This document shows positions 26,983 through 47,760 of a stretch of DNA of 64,000 nucleotides, one piece after another. The position numbers were made by a program, and so were the translations under genes. The stretch spans positions 62,001 to 126,000 of IMG/VR virus record IMGVR_UViG_3300017917_002434; one strand, written 5' to 3'. Numbering within the stretch: position 1 is the first letter of the stretch; each line of letters begins with the position of its first letter. Under the pieces are notes generated by a model. That model did no database searches, was not told the DNA's origin, and saw only the letters and a program-made list of their open reading frames with translations.

Positions 26983-27243
26983 ATGGCAAAAATGTACGGC
27001 CCAGAAGAAAAGGCAAAGCTCGAAAGATTGATTACCGAAGGCGGCAATGTCCTTCGAGAGATTGAAGATCTACAAGAAGGTCTCAAAGAAACTGTAAAAG
27101 CTGTAGCCGAAGAATTACAAGTTAAACCTAGCATTATTAACAAAGCAATTAAAATCGCACATAAAGATAATTGGAAAGACCACGAACAAGAATGGGACGA
27201 AATCGAAATGATCTTAGGTGTAACCAAAAGATTACCTGAATGA
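26983..27243 (+). CDS. T4 DsbA-like dsDNA-binding protein
   Basis: Size and the pattern L..LI.E.......IE.....LKE.....AEEL......INKAIKIAHK. Confidence 0.6.
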   Translation: MAKMYGPEEKAKLERLITEGGNVLREIEDLQEGLKETVKAVAEELQVKPSIINKAIKIAHKDNWKDHEQEWDEIEMILGVTKRLPE

Positions 27244-27530
27244 TAGATATATTAAATGGAACAGTCAATTGGATCAAACAAGATTACTCGAGCAATAGAA
27301 TACGTTTTTGCCTTGAGGTCCTTGCTTGGGCTATCAGCATTGGCTGTTCTATCACTATGGCACTCACCGTTCCAACACCACCTCTCATCATACTTTACCC
27401 AATCTGGATTATTGGTTGTGCTATATACGCTGGGTGTGCTCTTAGTCGTGGTTCCTTTGGTATGTTGGCTAATTATCTCTTACTGGTCACAATCGACACA
27501 GTAGGATTGGCCAGGATGATACTTCAATGA
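27240..27530 (+). CDS. Membrane protein (~3 TM)
   Basis: Three hydrophobic segments. Confidence 0.6.
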   Translation: MIDILNGTVNWIKQDYSSNRIRFCLEVLAWAISIGCSITMALTVPTPPLIILYPIWIIGCAIYAGCALSRGSFGMLANYLLLVTIDTVGLARMILQ

Positions 27531-27658
27531 CTGCTATAGCACTAGAAATTATTTTCAACTGGGTGTTAATGGGAATAATCCTATCAGCTGTAATGGTAAT
27601 CGGTTTATATTTTGCTATTCTATGCGAAAAATTTATTGACTACTTACGCAGTCAATAA
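27527..27658 (+). CDS. Small single-TM protein, 43 aa (not in ORF track)
   Basis: ATGA-coupled; MTAIALEIIFNWVLMGIILSAVMVIGLYFAILCEKFIDYLRSQ. Confidence 0.55.
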   Translation: MTAIALEIIFNWVLMGIILSAVMVIGLYFAILCEKFIDYLRSQ

Positions 27659-27672
27659 ATATATTAGAGTAA

Positions 27673-27728
27673 GGTTTGATCAGCCATAAATGATCCGTTT
27701 GGTTTGCCAGCCGCAAGTGGCATAGGAG
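27673..27728 (+). promoter_or_regulatory. Tandem hairpins in the DNA polymerase leader (putative translational operator)
   Basis: GATCA-gccataaa-TGATC and TGCCA-gccgcaag-TGGCA; the second abuts the TAGGAG RBS. Confidence 0.6.
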
Positions 27729-27734
27729 AAAAAT

Positions 27735-30401
27735 TTGAGTTACGTTGACGCATTCTATAATCGCGATCAGGATACTATCCATATTGTCGAACGAGACGAT
27801 AAAGGAATTAGGCATTTTAAAGAATATCCTGCTCGACACATCTTTTACTTTCAAGACCCTAAAGGAAAATACACTAGTACTCACGGAGAACCGCTGAGCC
27901 GTGTAACCTGTAAAAATCTCAAAGATTTACATAAAGAACTTAAAATACATAGTGGCATGAAGCTCTACGAATCGGACATAAATCCGATTTATCGCTGTCT
28001 CGAAGACAATTATCTAAATCAAGATTCTCCTAAATTACAAGTAGCGTTTTTTGATATTGAAGTTGACTTTGATCCGGAACGTGGTTACGCATCGCCTGAA
28101 GATGCTTTTATGCCGATTACTGCTATAGCTATTCATTTACAATGGCTGAATACTCTAGTTTGTTTAGCCCTACCTCCAAAAACGCTAACTTTAGAAGAAG
28201 CCAAAAAACAAGTATCTGAATTTCCTAATACATATATCTTCGAAACAGAGGCTGAACTATTAGATAACTTCTTAAATCTCATCCAAGATGCTGATGTGTT
28301 AAGTGGTTGGAACTCAGAAGGCTTTGATATTCCTTACACAGTTAATCGTGTTACCAAAGTTCTCAGCAAAGATGACACAAGACGTTTCTGTTTGTGGGAT
28401 CAATATCCTAAGAAGCGTGAATACGAGAAATATGGTAGAACTTCTGTGACCTATGATCTCGTAGGTAGAGTACATCTAGATTTATTAGAAATCTATAGAA
28501 AATATACCTACGAAGAAAGACATTCGTATCGACTAGATGCTATCGCCGAATATGAATTAGGAGAAACTAAAACAGTCTATGAAGGTACATTAGATCAACT
28601 TTACAATAATGATTTCAAAAAGTTCATCGAATACAATAGACAAGACTGTGCTCTACTAGATAAACTAGACAATAAACTTAAATTCTTGGATCTCGCTAAT
28701 AAGATCGCACACGAAAATACAGTATTACTACAGACTACAATGGGTGCTGTAGCTGTTACAGAGCAGGCTATCATTAACGAGGCACATCGTAGAGGGATGA
28801 TAGTACCCAATCGGGTAAGAAGAGAACCTGGCTCTGAGCCAGCTGCTGGTGCTTATGTCGCTTATCCTAAGAAAGGCATCCACGAATGGATTGGTTCAGT
28901 TGATATTAACTCACTGTATCCTTCAGCAATTCGTGCCTTAAACATGGGACCAGAGACTATCGTAGGACAGTTGCGTCAAGACTACACTAAAAACTATATC
29001 GATCAAGAAATGGGCAAAGGAAAATCTTTCGCCGCTGCTTGGGAAGGTATATTTGGTAGTCTAGAATACGAATATGTGATGGAAAGAAACGTTGCCAAAG
29101 AAATTACTATCGACTGGGAAGGTGGGGGTAGTGATACACTCAGCGGTGCTCAGATCTATGATCTTATATTCGAAAACAATCAACCTTGGATGCTATCAGC
29201 AAACGGTACTATCTTTACCTACGAAAAAGAAGGTATTATTCCCGGACTGTTAAAGCGTTGGTATGCTGAACGTAAAGAGATGCAGGCCAAACTTAAAGAA
29301 TGTATCGCTGCTGGTAATAAAGTAGAAGAAGAATACTGGGACAAGCGACAGCTAGTTAAGAAGATTAATTTGAACAGTTTGTACGGTGCTATTCTTAATC
29401 CGGGTTGTAGGTTCTTTGATAATAGGATCGGTCAGAGTACTACACTCAGTGGTAGACAGATCGTCAAACATATGGCTAGTAAGATCAATGAAATAGCCAC
29501 AGGAGAATATGATTACAAAGGTAAAGCTGTAATCTACGGTGATACAGACTCATGTTATTTCTCAGCCTATCCTGTATTAAAGAAAGAAATTGAATCTGGA
29601 CAGTTGCCGTGGACCAAAGAAACTGTGGTTCAACTCTATGATCAGATCGCCGACGAAGTAAATGCCAGCTTTCCAAAAATGATGCAGGATAAGTTTCATT
29701 GTCCTAAGACTCGCGGAGAAGTTATTAAAGCAGGTAGAGAACTTGTTGCTTCAAAGGGGCTGTTTATTACCAAGAAGCGTTATGCTGTACTTTATTATGA
29801 TAAAGAAGGCAAACGTACAGATGTTAATGATAAACCTGGTAAAATCAAAGCCATGGGTCTTGATCTGAAACGTTCAGATACTCCTGTTGTAATTCAAGAC
29901 TTCCTTAGCAAAGTACTCGAGATGGTACTTAATGGTGTTCCTAGAGAAGAAGTTCTAGAATACATCACTGATTTCCGTACAGAGTTTAAGACTAGACCTG
30001 GTTGGGAGAAAGGTTCACCTAAACGTGCCAACAACATTACCGAGTATCAGGCTAAAGAAAAGAAACAAGGCAAAGCCAACATGCCCGGCCATGTTCGAGC
30101 TAGCTTAAACTGGAATACTCTGAAACGTATGCATGACGACAAGTACTCTATGGGGATCACTGACGGTGCTAAGGTTATTGTTTGTAAAGTCAAAGATAAT
30201 CCAATGGGCTATACTTCAGTGGCATACCCTGTTGACGAACTTAGATTGCCGCAATGGTTCAAAGATCTTCCGTTCGATGATTCCGAGATGGAGACTACAG
30301 TCATCGACGAAAAGCTAGAAAACCTTATTGGTGTTTTGGAATGGGACATCAGTTCAACAAGGTCAGATAACACATTCAGCAAATTGTTTGATTTTGAGTA
30401 A
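27735..30401 (+). CDS. Family B DNA polymerase (gp43-like) with 3'-5' exonuclease
   Basis: FDIEVD, GWNSEGFD, YNRQD, DINSLYPS, KINLNSLYG, YGDTDS, KKRY; TTG start. Confidence 0.96.
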   Translation: MSYVDAFYNRDQDTIHIVERDDKGIRHFKEYPARHIFYFQDPKGKYTSTHGEPLSRVTCKNLKDLHKELKIHSGMKLYESDINPIYRCLEDNYLNQDSPKLQVAFFDIEVDFDPERGYASPEDAFMPITAIAIHLQWLNTLVCLALPPKTLTLEEAKKQVSEFPNTYIFETEAELLDNFLNLIQDADVLSGWNSEGFDIPYTVNRVTKVLSKDDTRRFCLWDQYPKKREYEKYGRTSVTYDLVGRVHLDLLEIYRKYTYEERHSYRLDAIAEYELGETKTVYEGTLDQLYNNDFKKFIEYNRQDCALLDKLDNKLKFLDLANKIAHENTVLLQTTMGAVAVTEQAIINEAHRRGMIVPNRVRREPGSEPAAGAYVAYPKKGIHEWIGSVDINSLYPSAIRALNMGPETIVGQLRQDYTKNYIDQEMGKGKSFAAAWEGIFGSLEYEYVMERNVAKEITIDWEGGGSDTLSGAQIYDLIFENNQPWMLSANGTIFTYEKEGIIPGLLKRWYAERKEMQAKLKECIAAGNKVEEEYWDKRQLVKKINLNSLYGAILNPGCRFFDNRIGQSTTLSGRQIVKHMASKINEIATGEYDYKGKAVIYGDTDSCYFSAYPVLKKEIESGQLPWTKETVVQLYDQIADEVNASFPKMMQDKFHCPKTRGEVIKAGRELVASKGLFITKKRYAVLYYDKEGKRTDVNDKPGKIKAMGLDLKRSDTPVVIQDFLSKVLEMVLNGVPREEVLEYITDFRTEFKTRPGWEKGSPKRANNITEYQAKEKKQGKANMPGHVRASLNWNTLKRMHDDKYSMGITDGAKVIVCKVKDNPMGYTSVAYPVDELRLPQWFKDLPFDDSEMETTVIDEKLENLIGVLEWDISSTRSDNTFSKLFDFE

Positions 30402-30463: not shown

Positions 30464-31201
30464 ATGAAAGATATTTTACAAGACATCGTAGGTCACACAC
30501 AGAATCTAGGCTTCTTAACAACTGTTAAAGTCACAGGCTCAGAAGAAGGTACAGCAATTTTTTCAATGGCGGATGATCGTTCTGTGATCATGGAAGCTAC
30601 TACACACAATCCATATCCAGATATGATTGGTACATTTGGTATGCCGCAACTACAGAAACTCAAGTATCTGTTAGATGGGCCGGAGTATAAAGAAGATGCT
30701 AAGATCAATATTACCACAGCAGAACGCAATGGCGAAACTATTCCTGTAGGCATCCACTTTGAAAACAAAGACGGCGACTTCAAGAACGATTATCGTTTCA
30801 TGAATCAAGAAATCATCAACGAAAAGATGAAGACAGTCAAGTTTCGTGGTGTTAAGTGGGACGTAGAATTAGAGCCAAGCGTGGCCGCAGTACAGCGTTT
30901 CAACTTTCAAGCAGGTGCTCACAGCGAACATCCGACATTTCTCGCTAAAACAGACAGCGGTAATCTAAAGTTTATCTTTGGTGATGCTTCTACACACGGT
31001 GGTGAGTTTGTATTCGCACAGAATGTAGCAGGTAAACTTGATCGCGGTTGGACTTGGCCAGTCAATCCAATCCTAAGTATCTTGAAAATCGCAGATGTTA
31101 ACAATACAAAAATGGCTCTAAGTAATGAAGGTGCCATCCAGATTACTCTAGACAGCGGTTTAGCTACTTACAAATACATTATTCCAGCACAACAGCAATG
31201 A
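30464..31201 (+). CDS. Probable sliding clamp (gp45/PCNA-like)
   Basis: 245 aa, directly after the polymerase; PCNA-like C-terminal strand YKYIIPA; clamp loader present in the window. Confidence 0.55.
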   Translation: MKDILQDIVGHTQNLGFLTTVKVTGSEEGTAIFSMADDRSVIMEATTHNPYPDMIGTFGMPQLQKLKYLLDGPEYKEDAKINITTAERNGETIPVGIHFENKDGDFKNDYRFMNQEIINEKMKTVKFRGVKWDVELEPSVAAVQRFNFQAGAHSEHPTFLAKTDSGNLKFIFGDASTHGGEFVFAQNVAGKLDRGWTWPVNPILSILKIADVNNTKMALSNEGAIQITLDSGLATYKYIIPAQQQ

Positions 31202-47453: not shown

Positions 47454-47760
47454 AAAATACTTCAAGCCGCCCAAAGATGTTATAAAAGAATGGCCTGAAG
47501 TATTCGAAGAGATATACATGAGCTCGATGCCCATTAAGTATATCCATGGAGTAGAACTAACCTTTCACGACGGCAGAGTTTGGGAAATTGATCTTCCAGA
47601 ACAACTAGATCTAGTTGACGAAGATGATATTTTGGAAAAACTTTCTGAAGGTATCAGAGATTTCCAAGATGAAATCGTTACCGTTAACTTTCAAGTTGAC
47701 ATAGACCGACTTAAACAAGATATTTTAAAATTAACAAAAAACATATTAGGTGACAAATGA
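47446..47760 (+). CDS. Hypothetical protein
   Basis: GTG start; coupled ORF. Confidence 0.55.
   Translation: MPKKYFKPPKDVIKEWPEVFEEIYMSSMPIKYIHGVELTFHDGRVWEIDLPEQLDLVDEDDILEKLSEGIRDFQDEIVTVNFQVDIDRLKQDILKLTKNILGDK

What the first reader, a model, noticed from the sequence alone, without database searches (positions are those of the whole stretch)
27673..27737. Duplicated 5-bp-stem/8-nt-loop hairpins at the DNA polymerase RBS
Seen: two tandem units, GGTTT-GATCA-gccataaa-TGATC and GGTT-TGCCA-gccgcaag-TGGCA. The stems differ in sequence but both pair, and both loops read GCC-x-x-AA-x. The second stem abuts TAGGAG and a weak TTG start. Known: T4 gp43 represses its own translation through a 5-bp-stem, 8-nt-loop hairpin just upstream of its Shine-Dalgarno. 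Inference: a doubled autogenous operator with a new loop sequence, and a candidate new cis-regulatory RNA motif with internal covariation.
Basis: partly seen in the sequence, partly recalled or inferred. Interest (0 to 1): 0.72.

Follow-up and report, generated by a model that had tools for sequence, protein, structure and literature searches.

The report
Tandem mini-pseudoknots before phage DNA polymerase
The two small hairpins in front of this jumbo phage's DNA polymerase gene are a real, strongly conserved RNA element found only in front of that gene in hundreds of uncultured phages. Each hairpin very probably folds into a tiny pseudoknot, and the pair most likely controls how much polymerase is made.

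Summary
Two 5-bp-stem/8-nt-loop hairpins (27678-27695 and 27705-27722) lie just 5' of AGGAG and the TTG start of an 888-aa family-B DNA polymerase.

- **Single sequence:** folding alone is not significant (z +0.4 to +1.0). The case rests on comparison with relatives.
- **Conservation:** 324 related viral contigs gave 208 distinct leaders. Of these, 156 carry two units, 29 carry one and 22 carry none.
- **Stems:** they covary massively, while the loops stay GCC-N-N-A-A-R.
- **New finding:** the GGY triplet 1-3 nt 5' of each stem pairs with the loop's GCC. A database-wide test found GGT/GCC in at least 78 true leaders and AGT/GCT in 10, but AGT/GCC and GGT/GCT in none. Each unit is therefore probably a mini H-type pseudoknot.
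- **Gene association:** a search blind to genes found the tandem motif in front of this polymerase gene in 78 of 80 hits. It occurs once in the 270-kb genome.
- **Known families:** Rfam has nothing like it, and cultured relatives lack it.

The function is inferred, not shown. The most likely reading is a protein-bound translational operator. The polymerase itself is the leading candidate binder, by analogy with T4 gp43. Rivals are another binding protein, a riboswitch, or a protein-independent mRNA element.

The parts
27636..27665 (+). Sigma-70-like promoter candidate (TTGACT, 18 nt, TATATT). It would place an mRNA 5' end at about 27671-27673, the first bases of unit 1.
   Evidence: 10 of 12 consensus positions match. 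This is a consensus match only. In most relatives this stretch holds the last codons and stops of an upstream ORF, so it may not be a general feature.
27671..27671 (+). Invariant A two bases 5' of the GGT of unit 1.
   Evidence: A in 84 of 84 distinct leaders anchored on unit 1.
27673..27675 (+). Unit 1, GGT. Proposed 5' strand of pseudoknot stem S1, pairing with GCC 27683-85.
   Evidence: always able to pair with loop positions 1-3. AGT occurs only with GCT.
27678..27682 (+). Unit 1, 5' strand of the hairpin stem (S2), GATCA.
   Evidence: all five pairs show compensatory changes among relatives.
27683..27690 (+). Unit 1 loop GCCATAAA. GCC is the proposed 3' strand of S1. ATAAA is the A-rich loop L3.
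   Evidence: loop consensus G-C-C-N-N-A-A-R. In unit 1 the middle is nearly always AY.
27691..27695 (+). Unit 1, 3' strand of the hairpin stem (S2), TGATC.
   Evidence: -4.5 kcal/mol as an isolated hairpin.
27701..27703 (+). Unit 2, GGT. Proposed 5' strand of S1 of the second pseudoknot.
   Evidence: GGT/GCC in 88 distinct leaders and GGT/ACC in 6, with no non-pairing combination.
27705..27709 (+). Unit 2, 5' strand of the hairpin stem (S2), TGCCA.
   Evidence: 98.8% of cells paired. The inner pairs covary, while the outer U-A and G-C pairs are nearly invariant.
27710..27717 (+). Unit 2 loop GCCGCAAG. GCC is the proposed 3' strand of S1. GCAAG is L3.
27718..27722 (+). Unit 2, 3' strand of the hairpin stem (S2), TGGCA.
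   Evidence: -6.8 kcal/mol as an isolated hairpin.
27724..27728 (+). Shine-Dalgarno sequence AGGAG, 1 nt after unit 2 and 6 nt before the start codon.
   Evidence: GGAG is conserved at this place in the relatives.
27735..30401 (+). Family-B DNA polymerase gene, 888 aa, TTG start.
   Evidence: About 27% identical to T4-type gp43. The best cultured relatives are jumbo phages Phosso (51%) and Atu_ph07 (47%).

Best explanation
The 60 nt before the polymerase start codon encode an mRNA leader made of two tandem copies of one small structured unit.

**Anatomy of a unit**
- Each unit reads GGY, then 1-3 nt, then a 5-bp stem, then the loop GCC-NN-AA-R, then the return strand of the stem.
- The stem is shown by covariation.
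- The GGY most likely pairs with the loop's GCC, which makes each unit a mini H-type pseudoknot. S1 has 3 bp and S2 has 5 bp, stacked with no nucleotide between them. The A-rich NNAAR strand would cross S1.

**Proposed mechanism**
- The second unit ends 1-8 nt before the Shine-Dalgarno sequence.
- I propose the element is a translational operator. A protein that recognises the folded units would sit next to the ribosome-binding site and lower initiation on the polymerase mRNA.
- In this window the start codon is the weak TTG.
- The most likely binder is the polymerase itself, giving autogenous feedback as in T4/RB69 gp43.

**Shown versus inferred**
- Shown: the element exists, its stems, its conservation, and its exclusive link to this gene.
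- Strongly supported: the pseudoknot pairing.
- Inferred only: that it controls translation, that a protein binds it, and which protein.

**My odds**
- Real structured RNA element: 0.97.
- Pseudoknot: 0.75.
- Protein-bound translational operator: 0.6.
- The polymerase is the binder: 0.35-0.4.

The confidence given for this field is for the whole chain, including the polymerase as binder.
For: **Stems**
- In 51 leaders, hairpin 2 is paired in 98.8% of cells and three of its pairs covary.
- Over 109 distinct units, the number of double-change cells and the covariation score are far above both shuffled and slid controls.

**Strand**
- G-U pairs occur only in the + sense. The third S1 pair is U-G in 41 of 48 units, which would be a C-A mismatch on the other strand.

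**Pseudoknot**
- S1 pairs in 100% of 47-48 units.
- No non-pairing combination appears in about 190 units.
- The database-wide search gave true leaders for GGT/GCC (at least 78) and AGT/GCT (10). It gave none for AGT/GCC (0 of 9 hits) or GGT/GCT (0 of 7 hits).
- The AGT/GCT state needs 6 parsimony changes on the polymerase tree.

**Gene specificity**
- The unit occurs only here in the 270-kb record.
- The two-unit covariance model hits only the polymerase leader in this genome (E 2.7e-19, next best 3.4) and in five long related contigs.
- A motif search that named no gene returned the polymerase gene downstream in 78 of 80 hits. The other 2 hits have no stems.

**Position**
- Unit 2 ends 9-16 nt before the start codon, next to GGAG.
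- Lineages with a single unit mostly keep the one abutting the SD.

**Constraint beyond what the fold needs**
- The unit 1 loop is AYAAR, not NNAAR.
- The outer U-A and G-C pairs of unit 2 are nearly invariant.
- There is an invariant A at -2.

**Analogy with T4**
- The T4-type operator has the same hairpin geometry and similar stability.
- Review PMC3014915 reports that gp43 represses its own translation through such a hairpin. It also reports that UAAC/UAAA loop bases matter, and unit 1's loop contains UAAA.

**Other candidate binders nearby**
- No RegA homologue is present in the record.
- The two ORFs directly upstream are small membrane proteins, not plausible RNA binders.
Against: - There is no experimental or transcript evidence here. 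The RNA-library contigs gave no usable 5' end or expression pattern.
- The polymerase is only about 27% identical to T4 gp43. The review notes that some T4-related polymerases do not autoregulate.
- The loop sequence differs from the T4/RB69 operator, and no pseudoknot is known there.
- If GGY/GCC pairing and A-minor contacts explain most of the conserved bases, less is left that demands a protein reader.
- Several lineages have lost the element while keeping a nearly identical polymerase (L076, L117, L124). It is therefore dispensable, and nothing in the protein visibly tracks its presence.
- The S1 covariation rests on one pair with double changes. The AGT/GCT leaders resemble each other, so spread of one leader by recombination cannot be excluded.
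- The complex-prediction tool did not fold protein with RNA.
Confidence: 0.4

Rival explanations
1. The element is an operator for a different trans-acting protein. This could be a phage-encoded or host RNA-binding protein that represses or activates translation, or that sets the decay rate of the polymerase mRNA. The polymerase itself would not bind.
For: - All the structural, positional and conservation evidence fits this reading equally well.
- The two similar units would suit a dimeric binder.
- T4 uses dedicated regulators such as RegA next to gene 43.
- The record is only 76% complete, and most of its genes have no annotation.
Against: - The motif has a single target per genome. General regulators such as RegA have many targets.
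- No RegA family member is present in the record.
- The adjacent upstream ORFs are small membrane proteins.
- No candidate binder gene travels with the motif apart from the polymerase gene itself.
Confidence: 0.2
2. The element works without a protein. It could be a compact structure at or near the 5' end that protects the polymerase mRNA from decay. It could also tune ribosome loading, as a standby site or enhancer, for a gene that often has a weak start codon.
For: - If the pseudoknot forms, base pairing and A-rich loop contacts could explain most of the conserved nucleotides on their own.
- A sigma-70-like promoter in the window would start the transcript at the first base of unit 1.
- TTG starts occur in about a quarter of leaders.
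- The SD itself is not sequestered.
Against: - A generic stabiliser would not need an almost fixed S1 sequence, an AYAAR loop in unit 1, an invariant A at -2, or invariant outer pairs in unit 2.
- It would also be expected on other genes of the same phage, but it occurs only here.
- In most relatives the stretch upstream is the end of a neighbouring ORF, so the leader may be intercistronic rather than 5'-terminal.
Confidence: 0.2
3. The element is a tandem riboswitch. Each mini-pseudoknot, or the pair together, would bind a small molecule such as a nucleotide-pool metabolite and adjust polymerase translation.
For: - Several riboswitch classes are small H-type pseudoknots, and tandem small hairpins with fixed loops exist (guanidine-II). 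This comparison comes from general knowledge, not from a test here.
- The motif has a fixed core, covarying stems and a position next to the RBS.
Against: - No Rfam riboswitch family matches, even at E up to 10.
- At about 23 nt, a unit has almost no conserved unpaired nucleotides beyond AA, leaving little to build a pocket.
- The linker and loop positions 4-5 vary freely in unit 2.
- The SD is not part of any conserved alternative pairing that I could find.
- Only one gene per genome carries the motif.
Confidence: 0.12
4. The element acts at the DNA level, for example as single-stranded DNA hairpins at an origin or priming site. Alternatively it is a chance or selfish repeat with no function in the mRNA.
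For: G-T wobble on the + strand would also be tolerated in folded single-stranded DNA. Single-sequence folding is not better than shuffles.
Against: - The distance to the SD and start codon is fixed, and the motif is linked to this one gene whatever lies upstream.
- Loop identity is kept while the stems covary. This excludes a double-stranded DNA palindrome site.
- No other copies exist in the genome, so it is not a dispersed repeat.
- Conservation across 208 distinct leaders excludes chance.
Confidence: 0.03

Closest known systems
Translational operator of T4/RB69 gene 43 (autogenous repression by the gp43 DNA polymerase)
   Same: - It lies in the leader of the phage's replicative family-B polymerase gene, just 5' of the ribosome-binding site.
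- It has a hairpin with a 5-bp stem and 8-nt loop of similar stability.
- Its loop contains an A-rich xAAx core. According to the review, UAAC in T4/RB69 and UAAA in RB49 matter for binding.
- It is a single-gene element.
   Different: - Here there are two copies rather than one.
- The loop is GCC-NN-AA-R rather than AAUAACUC.
- A conserved 5' GGY pairs with the loop, whereas no pseudoknot is known for gene 43.
- The polymerase is only about 27% identical to gp43.
- Binding and repression have not been tested here.
T4/T2 gene 32 leader pseudoknot (autogenous control by the single-strand DNA-binding protein)
   Same: It is a small H-type pseudoknot in the leader of a phage replication gene, used for autogenous translational control (review PMC3014915).
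   Different: - It belongs to a different gene and a different binder.
- It is a single, larger pseudoknot, followed by a long unstructured A/U-rich stretch that the protein coats cooperatively.
- There is no sequence likeness, and no Rfam match was found here.
E. coli thrS operator and ribosomal-protein leaders (S15, S4, L20)
   Same: These are leader structures next to the RBS, made of two similar stem-loops or of pseudoknots. They are read by the protein the mRNA encodes. This comparison comes from general knowledge; L20 and S15 are mentioned.
   Different: The proteins and sequences are unrelated. Those operators mimic the protein's tRNA or rRNA site, and no such mimicry can be shown here.
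Small pseudoknot and tandem-hairpin riboswitches (preQ1-I, guanidine-II/mini-ykkC)
   Same: They are very small, with covarying stems and fixed loop letters. They have a tandem arrangement or an H-type fold with an A-rich strand, and they sit in front of an RBS.
   Different: - No Rfam match was found.
- The loop letters differ.
- The pairing strand is 5' of the hairpin, not 3'.
- The SD is not sequestered.
- No ligand-pocket-like set of conserved unpaired bases is present.

Membership tests
T4/RB69 gene 43 translational operator | Lies in the 5' leader of the phage replicative family-B DNA polymerase gene, adjacent to or overlapping the ribosome-binding site. | tested here: met
   Unit 2 ends 1 nt before AGGAG. 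The same placement is seen in 185 of 208 distinct leaders.
T4/RB69 gene 43 translational operator | A single hairpin with a stem of about 5 bp and an 8-nt loop. | tested here: inconclusive
   The geometry of each unit matches. However, there are two units in 156 of 208 leaders, and each has an extra 5' pairing strand.
T4/RB69 gene 43 translational operator | Loop sequence AAUAACUC, with the UAAC core shared by T4 and RB69. | tested here: not met
   The loops are GCCATAAA and GCCGCAAG, with family consensus GCC-NN-AA-R. Only a UAAA or xAAx core is shared.
T4/RB69 gene 43 translational operator | The polymerase binds its own mRNA at this site and represses translation. | not testable with these tools
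   The complex-prediction job with RNA was not folded. This needs binding and reporter assays.
T4/RB69 gene 43 translational operator | Sequence homology of the operator among related phages. | tested here: not met
   The closest cultured relatives lack the motif: Phosso, Atu_ph07, Vibrio 2.275.O, 121Q, PHA46 and XbC2. T4-type and RB49-type leaders differ in sequence.
T4 gene 32 pseudoknot operator | A pseudoknot in the leader of the single-strand DNA-binding protein gene, followed by an unstructured A/U-rich binding tract. | tested here: not met
   The downstream gene is a DNA polymerase. Only 12 nt separate unit 2 from the start codon. No Rfam hit was found.
Known riboswitch and RNA families (Rfam 15) | Match to a curated covariance model. 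| tested here: not met
   the only hits are noise (E 0.36-5.7, all far below gathering scores), and none is a riboswitch.
Guanidine-II (mini-ykkC) tandem hairpins | Two small hairpins, each with an ACGR tetraloop. | tested here: not met
   The loops here are 8 nt, GCC-NN-AA-R.
Intrinsic terminator of the upstream gene | A GC-rich stem followed by a run of U. | tested here: not met
   no terminator-like sites in 27300-27800. The stems are followed by CGTTTGG and TAGGAG.
H-type RNA pseudoknot (structural class) | Loop bases of a hairpin pair with a strand outside it, supported by covariation. | tested here: met
   - S1 is paired in 100% of units, with pair types GC/AU and UG/CG/UA.
- Database-wide, AGT occurs only with GCT and GGT only with GCC among true leaders.
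- The physical fold itself is not testable here.

The most novel reading that the evidence does not exclude
The tandem units are a new class of very small pseudoknot aptamers. They would sense a small molecule tied to DNA synthesis, for example a deoxynucleotide or another nucleotide-pool signal, and set polymerase translation accordingly. That would make this a phage-borne riboswitch on a replication gene.
Probability: 0.1. Interest if true: 0.9.

Novelty: new variant of a known kind. Interest (0 to 1): 0.64.

Why it matters
Autogenous control of a DNA polymerase by its own mRNA is known essentially from T4 and its close kin. That operator is the hairpin on which SELEX was first demonstrated.

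This finding adds a second, structurally different leader element in front of a distantly related phage polymerase.
- It is supported by more than 200 distinct natural sequences.
- It has a clean covariation signal for a pseudoknot of only about 23 nt, present in two copies.

If the polymerase binds it, feedback on polymerase synthesis would be a recurrent solution in large phages. It would also give a natural RNA that a family-B polymerase reads. If something else binds it, whether a protein or a ligand, the element is a new regulatory RNA class from abundant uncultured freshwater and marine jumbo phages.

In either case it is a compact, well-defined motif. It is ready for binding, probing and structural work, and it is a candidate new entry for RNA family databases.

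Tried and rejected
- **Single-sequence folding.** The hairpins are no more stable than shuffles, so thermodynamics alone gives no support.
- **Rfam at a permissive threshold.** Only noise was returned.
- **Nucleotide search of cultured phages.** No close relative was found.
- **Protein search of cultured phages.** The nearest cultured phages lack the motif, so no annotated or studied example exists.
- **Complex prediction with polymerase plus leader RNA.** The job was not folded, because the tool gives no result for RNA partners. It is not evidence either way.
- **Reads from three RNA libraries and one DNA run.** Only sparse contigs from relatives were found. One RNA-library contig covers 27697-27936. 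There is no 5' end and no proof of transcription.
- **Petrov & Karam 2002 (PMC137073).** The paper is not held. Operator details were taken from review PMC3014915 and from phage records instead.
- **RegA-type repressor.** The family is absent from the record.
- **Upstream neighbours as binder candidates.** The 96-aa and 43-aa ORFs are hydrophobic membrane-type peptides with no family hits. They were rejected.
- **The ATAAGTA/ATAAATA box upstream of unit 1 as a phage promoter.** In most relatives it overlaps the last codons and stop codons of the upstream ORF, so I do not claim it.
- **Kissing between the two loops.** Both loops carry GCC, so they are not complementary.
- **Cross-unit pairing (GGU of one unit with the loop of the other).** In AGT/GCT leaders the change is confined to unit 1, which argues for pairing within a unit.
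- **Hairpin with a GCC..AA loop at window 47488-47505.** It lies inside an ORF, has no GGY, and is a chance match.
- **One mis-set coordinate.** L046 in alignment A3 put gaps in that row. The tool set those cells aside.
Full report
**1. What is in the window**

- Unit 1: GGT-TT-GATCA-GCCATAAA-TGATC.
- A 5-nt spacer follows.
- Unit 2: GGT-T-TGCCA-GCCGCAAG-TGGCA.
- Then T, AGGAG, six bases, and TTG.

The TTG opens an 888-aa ORF (27735-30401). It carries the Pfam family-B polymerase domain and its exonuclease domain.

The window is part of a 269,730-bp viral record estimated to be 76% complete. The polymerase is at most 51% identical to any cultured phage. The best matches are jumbo phages: Sinorhizobium phage Phosso, Agrobacterium phage Atu_ph07 and the 121Q/Rak2-like group. 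It is about 27% identical to T4-type gp43.

Sequencing runs that hold the stretch are freshwater, pond, river and aquaculture metagenomes.

**2. Is it more than chance?**

From this one sequence, no.
- The region folds no better than dinucleotide shuffles (z +0.99 for 106 nt).
- The 64-nt leader gives z +0.37, although its minimum-energy fold is exactly the two hairpins.

The case rests on relatives. Three protein-seeded scans and four pattern scans of viral contigs gave 324 loci with the polymerase start and at least 110 nt upstream. These make 208 distinct leaders. Of these, 156 have two units, 29 have one, 22 have none, and one scored three.

- In a MAFFT alignment of 51 distinct leaders, hairpin 2 is paired in 98.8% of cells. 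Its pair types are CG 25/UA 22/UG 2/AU 1 and CG 24/GC 14/AU 12 at two positions. RNAalifold recovers it unaided.
- Hairpin 1 scores 62.8% in that gap-free register only because one large group carries a one-base bulge in the stem. A per-sequence parse finds a closing stem in nearly every leader.
- Pooling 109 distinct units, 87% of cells pair. All five pairs show double changes. There are 152 double-change cells against 41 +/- 11 after shuffling. The covariation score is 0.72 against 0.26 for shuffles and 0.02-0.20 for slid partners.
- The loop is nearly fixed. In 344 units, C2 and A7 are invariant. G1, C3 and A6 are about 98% conserved. Position 8 is a purine in 94%.

**3. Each unit is probably a pseudoknot**

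It lies 1-3 nt 5' of each stem. 5'-GGU-3' can pair with the loop's 5'-GCC-3'.

- Across about 190 distinct units, every observed combination can pair. These are GGT/GCC (170), GGC/GCC (7), GGT/ACC (7) and AGT/GCT (2, plus L046). No non-pairing combination occurs.
- In a gap-free alignment of 48 units with a 2-nt linker, this helix is paired in 100% of cells: GC 45/AU 2, GC 47, and UG 41/CG 6/UA 1.

I then asked the whole viral collection for each combination, leaving the stems unspecified.

| 5' triplet / loop start | Stretches found | True polymerase leaders |
|---|---|---|
| AGGT / GCC | at least 120 (80 fetched) | 78 of the 80 fetched |
| AAGT / GCT | 37 | 10 |
| AAGT / GCC | 9 | 0 |
| AGGT / GCT | 7 | 0 |

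A "true" leader is one with both stems and the polymerase gene downstream. So the first base of the triplet and the third loop base change only together.

On polymerase trees, the AGT/GCT state sits in separate clades and needs 6 parsimony changes for 7 leaves. These leaders do resemble each other, so transfer of a leader by recombination cannot be ruled out.

In AGT/GCT leaders the change is confined to unit 1, while unit 2 keeps GGT/GCC. The pairing is therefore within a unit.

The resulting fold is a mini H-type pseudoknot.
- S1 is 3 bp (GGY/GCC).
- L1 is 1-3 nt.
- S2 is 5 bp.
- No nucleotide lies between S2 and S1.
- L3 is NNAAR.

The idea that the conserved AA docks in the minor groove of S1 is my inference from what such pseudoknots usually do. 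It was not tested. The predominant U-G pair in S1 and the G-U pairs in S2 fit only the + strand, which is the mRNA sense.

**4. It belongs to the polymerase gene and to nothing else**

- A scan of the 270-kb record for a stem of at least 5 bp closing a GCCNNAAN loop finds the two units, one coding-region chance match on the + strand (47488-47505, inside an ORF and without GGY), and one on the minus strand. Shuffles give 2.6.
- A covariance model of the two-unit leader hits only this site in the record (E 2.7e-19, next best 3.4). It hits only the polymerase leader in five related contigs of 76-138 kb.
- The gene-blind pattern search returned the polymerase ORF directly downstream in 78 of 80 hits. 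The two others have no stems. In three of the 78, a small ORF lies between the motif and the polymerase gene.
- What lies upstream varies, and the motif stays with the polymerase gene.
- It has been lost several times where an upstream ORF now runs up to the SD. This includes lineages whose polymerase is almost identical to motif-bearing sisters.
- Cultured relatives at 42-51% identity do not have it.
- A second large clade keeps one unit abutting the SD and has a different GC-rich hairpin upstream.

**5. How it most likely works**

Unit 2 ends 9-16 nt before the start codon, next to GGAG. The SD itself is not paired in any conserved way. The isolated hairpins are weak, at -4.5 and -6.8 kcal/mol, like the T4-type operator hairpin at -6.3.

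Several features are more constrained than the fold needs.
- The unit 1 loop is AYAAR.
- The two outer pairs of unit 2 are almost invariant.
- An A two bases before unit 1 is invariant in 84 of 84 leaders.

Together with the one-gene distribution, this looks like the signature of a specific operator read by a trans-acting factor that blocks or tunes 30S binding. About a quarter of the leaders, including this one, use TTG.

The known precedent is T4/RB69 gp43, which represses its own translation through a hairpin upstream of its RBS. UAAC/UAAA loop bases matter there (review PMC3014915). I checked the geometry in a T4-type phage. On that basis the polymerase is my leading candidate binder.

From memory only, and not checked here, small H-type pseudoknots with A-rich loops were selected as ligands of HIV reverse transcriptase. 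I treat this as a lead rather than evidence.

No RegA homologue is in the record. The two ORFs just upstream are small membrane-type proteins.

None of this shows binding. The rivals remain open: another protein, a protein-independent stabiliser or enhancer, or a riboswitch. They are scored in the report sections.

**6. Comparison and novelty**

The element works like, or is at least placed and shaped like, the gene 43 operator. It is not a member of that family by sequence.
- The loop differs.
- There are two copies.
- There is a pseudoknot pairing that the gene 43 operator is not known to have.

It is not the gene 32 pseudoknot, because the gene differs and there is no A/U tract. It matches no Rfam family. 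Literature searches found no description of it.

I file it as a new variant of a known kind: a phage polymerase leader operator built from a new RNA motif. About one chance in ten remains that it is something categorically different, namely a riboswitch.

**7. Limits**

- All function is inferred.
- Whether the leader is at the 5' end of a transcript is unknown. The window has a sigma-70-like promoter ending 6-8 nt before unit 1. In most relatives, however, that stretch is the end of a neighbouring ORF.
- Shuffle controls ignore phylogeny.
- The trees are FastTree trees of the first 300-600 residues with midpoint rooting.
- Alignment A1 leaves out L076, which has no motif.
- Alignment A3 uses only units with a 2-nt linker and has one mis-set row (L046).

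Noticed in passing
window 27636-27665: A sigma-70-like promoter candidate (TTGACT, 18 nt, TATATT; 10 of 12 consensus positions) lies inside the 43-aa ORF. It would start a transcript right at unit 1.
   Followed up: partly
window 27240-27530 and 27527-27658: Two small, very hydrophobic ORFs (96 aa and 43 aa) lie directly upstream of the leader and have no Pfam or PHROG family. In most relatives the homologue of the 96-aa ORF ends about 20 nt before unit 1. The 43-aa ORF therefore looks like an insertion in this phage.
   Followed up: partly
L189, L194, L196, L200, L205, L226 and others (about 85 nt before the polymerase start): A second large clade has only one unit, abutting the SD. Upstream of it is a different conserved GC-rich hairpin (CGCCC..GGGCG) followed by the letters ATGTAG, a start codon directly followed by a stop codon.
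   Followed up: no
L258, L305, L325: In these loci the tandem motif is followed by a small ORF, and the polymerase gene starts about 160-180 nt further on. The motif may therefore control a short upstream cistron there.
   Followed up: no
L076, L117, L124, L139, L141, L149, L181-L188: These leaders have no motif. An upstream ORF runs to the polymerase SD. In L076, L117 and L124 this holds even though the polymerase is nearly identical to that of sister contigs that keep both units.
   Followed up: partly
polymerase start codon across 208 distinct leaders: TTG is the start codon in about a quarter of the leaders, including the window. Some lineages start two codons later (MYVDA instead of MSYVDA).
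   Followed up: partly
window 26983-27243: An 86-aa ORF matches the phage DsbA transcriptional regulator family (Pfam E 8.5e-6; PHROG 12534 E 6e-21), two genes upstream of the polymerase.
   Followed up: no
L083 (Agrobacterium phage Atu_ph07, MF403008.1 211877-214846): In this cultured relative the polymerase is annotated as two adjacent CDS, so the gene is split.
   Followed up: no
window 27697-27936: One 240-nt contig from an RNA-seq library (run X19) covers the stretch from between the two units into the polymerase ORF, with 3 mismatches. It cannot be told apart from DNA carry-over.
   Followed up: partly
window 30464-31201: The 245-aa ORF just after the polymerase matches PHROG 12062, of unknown function (E 1e-37). 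The gene near this position in phage Phosso, one small ORF further downstream, is annotated as a sliding clamp.
   Followed up: no
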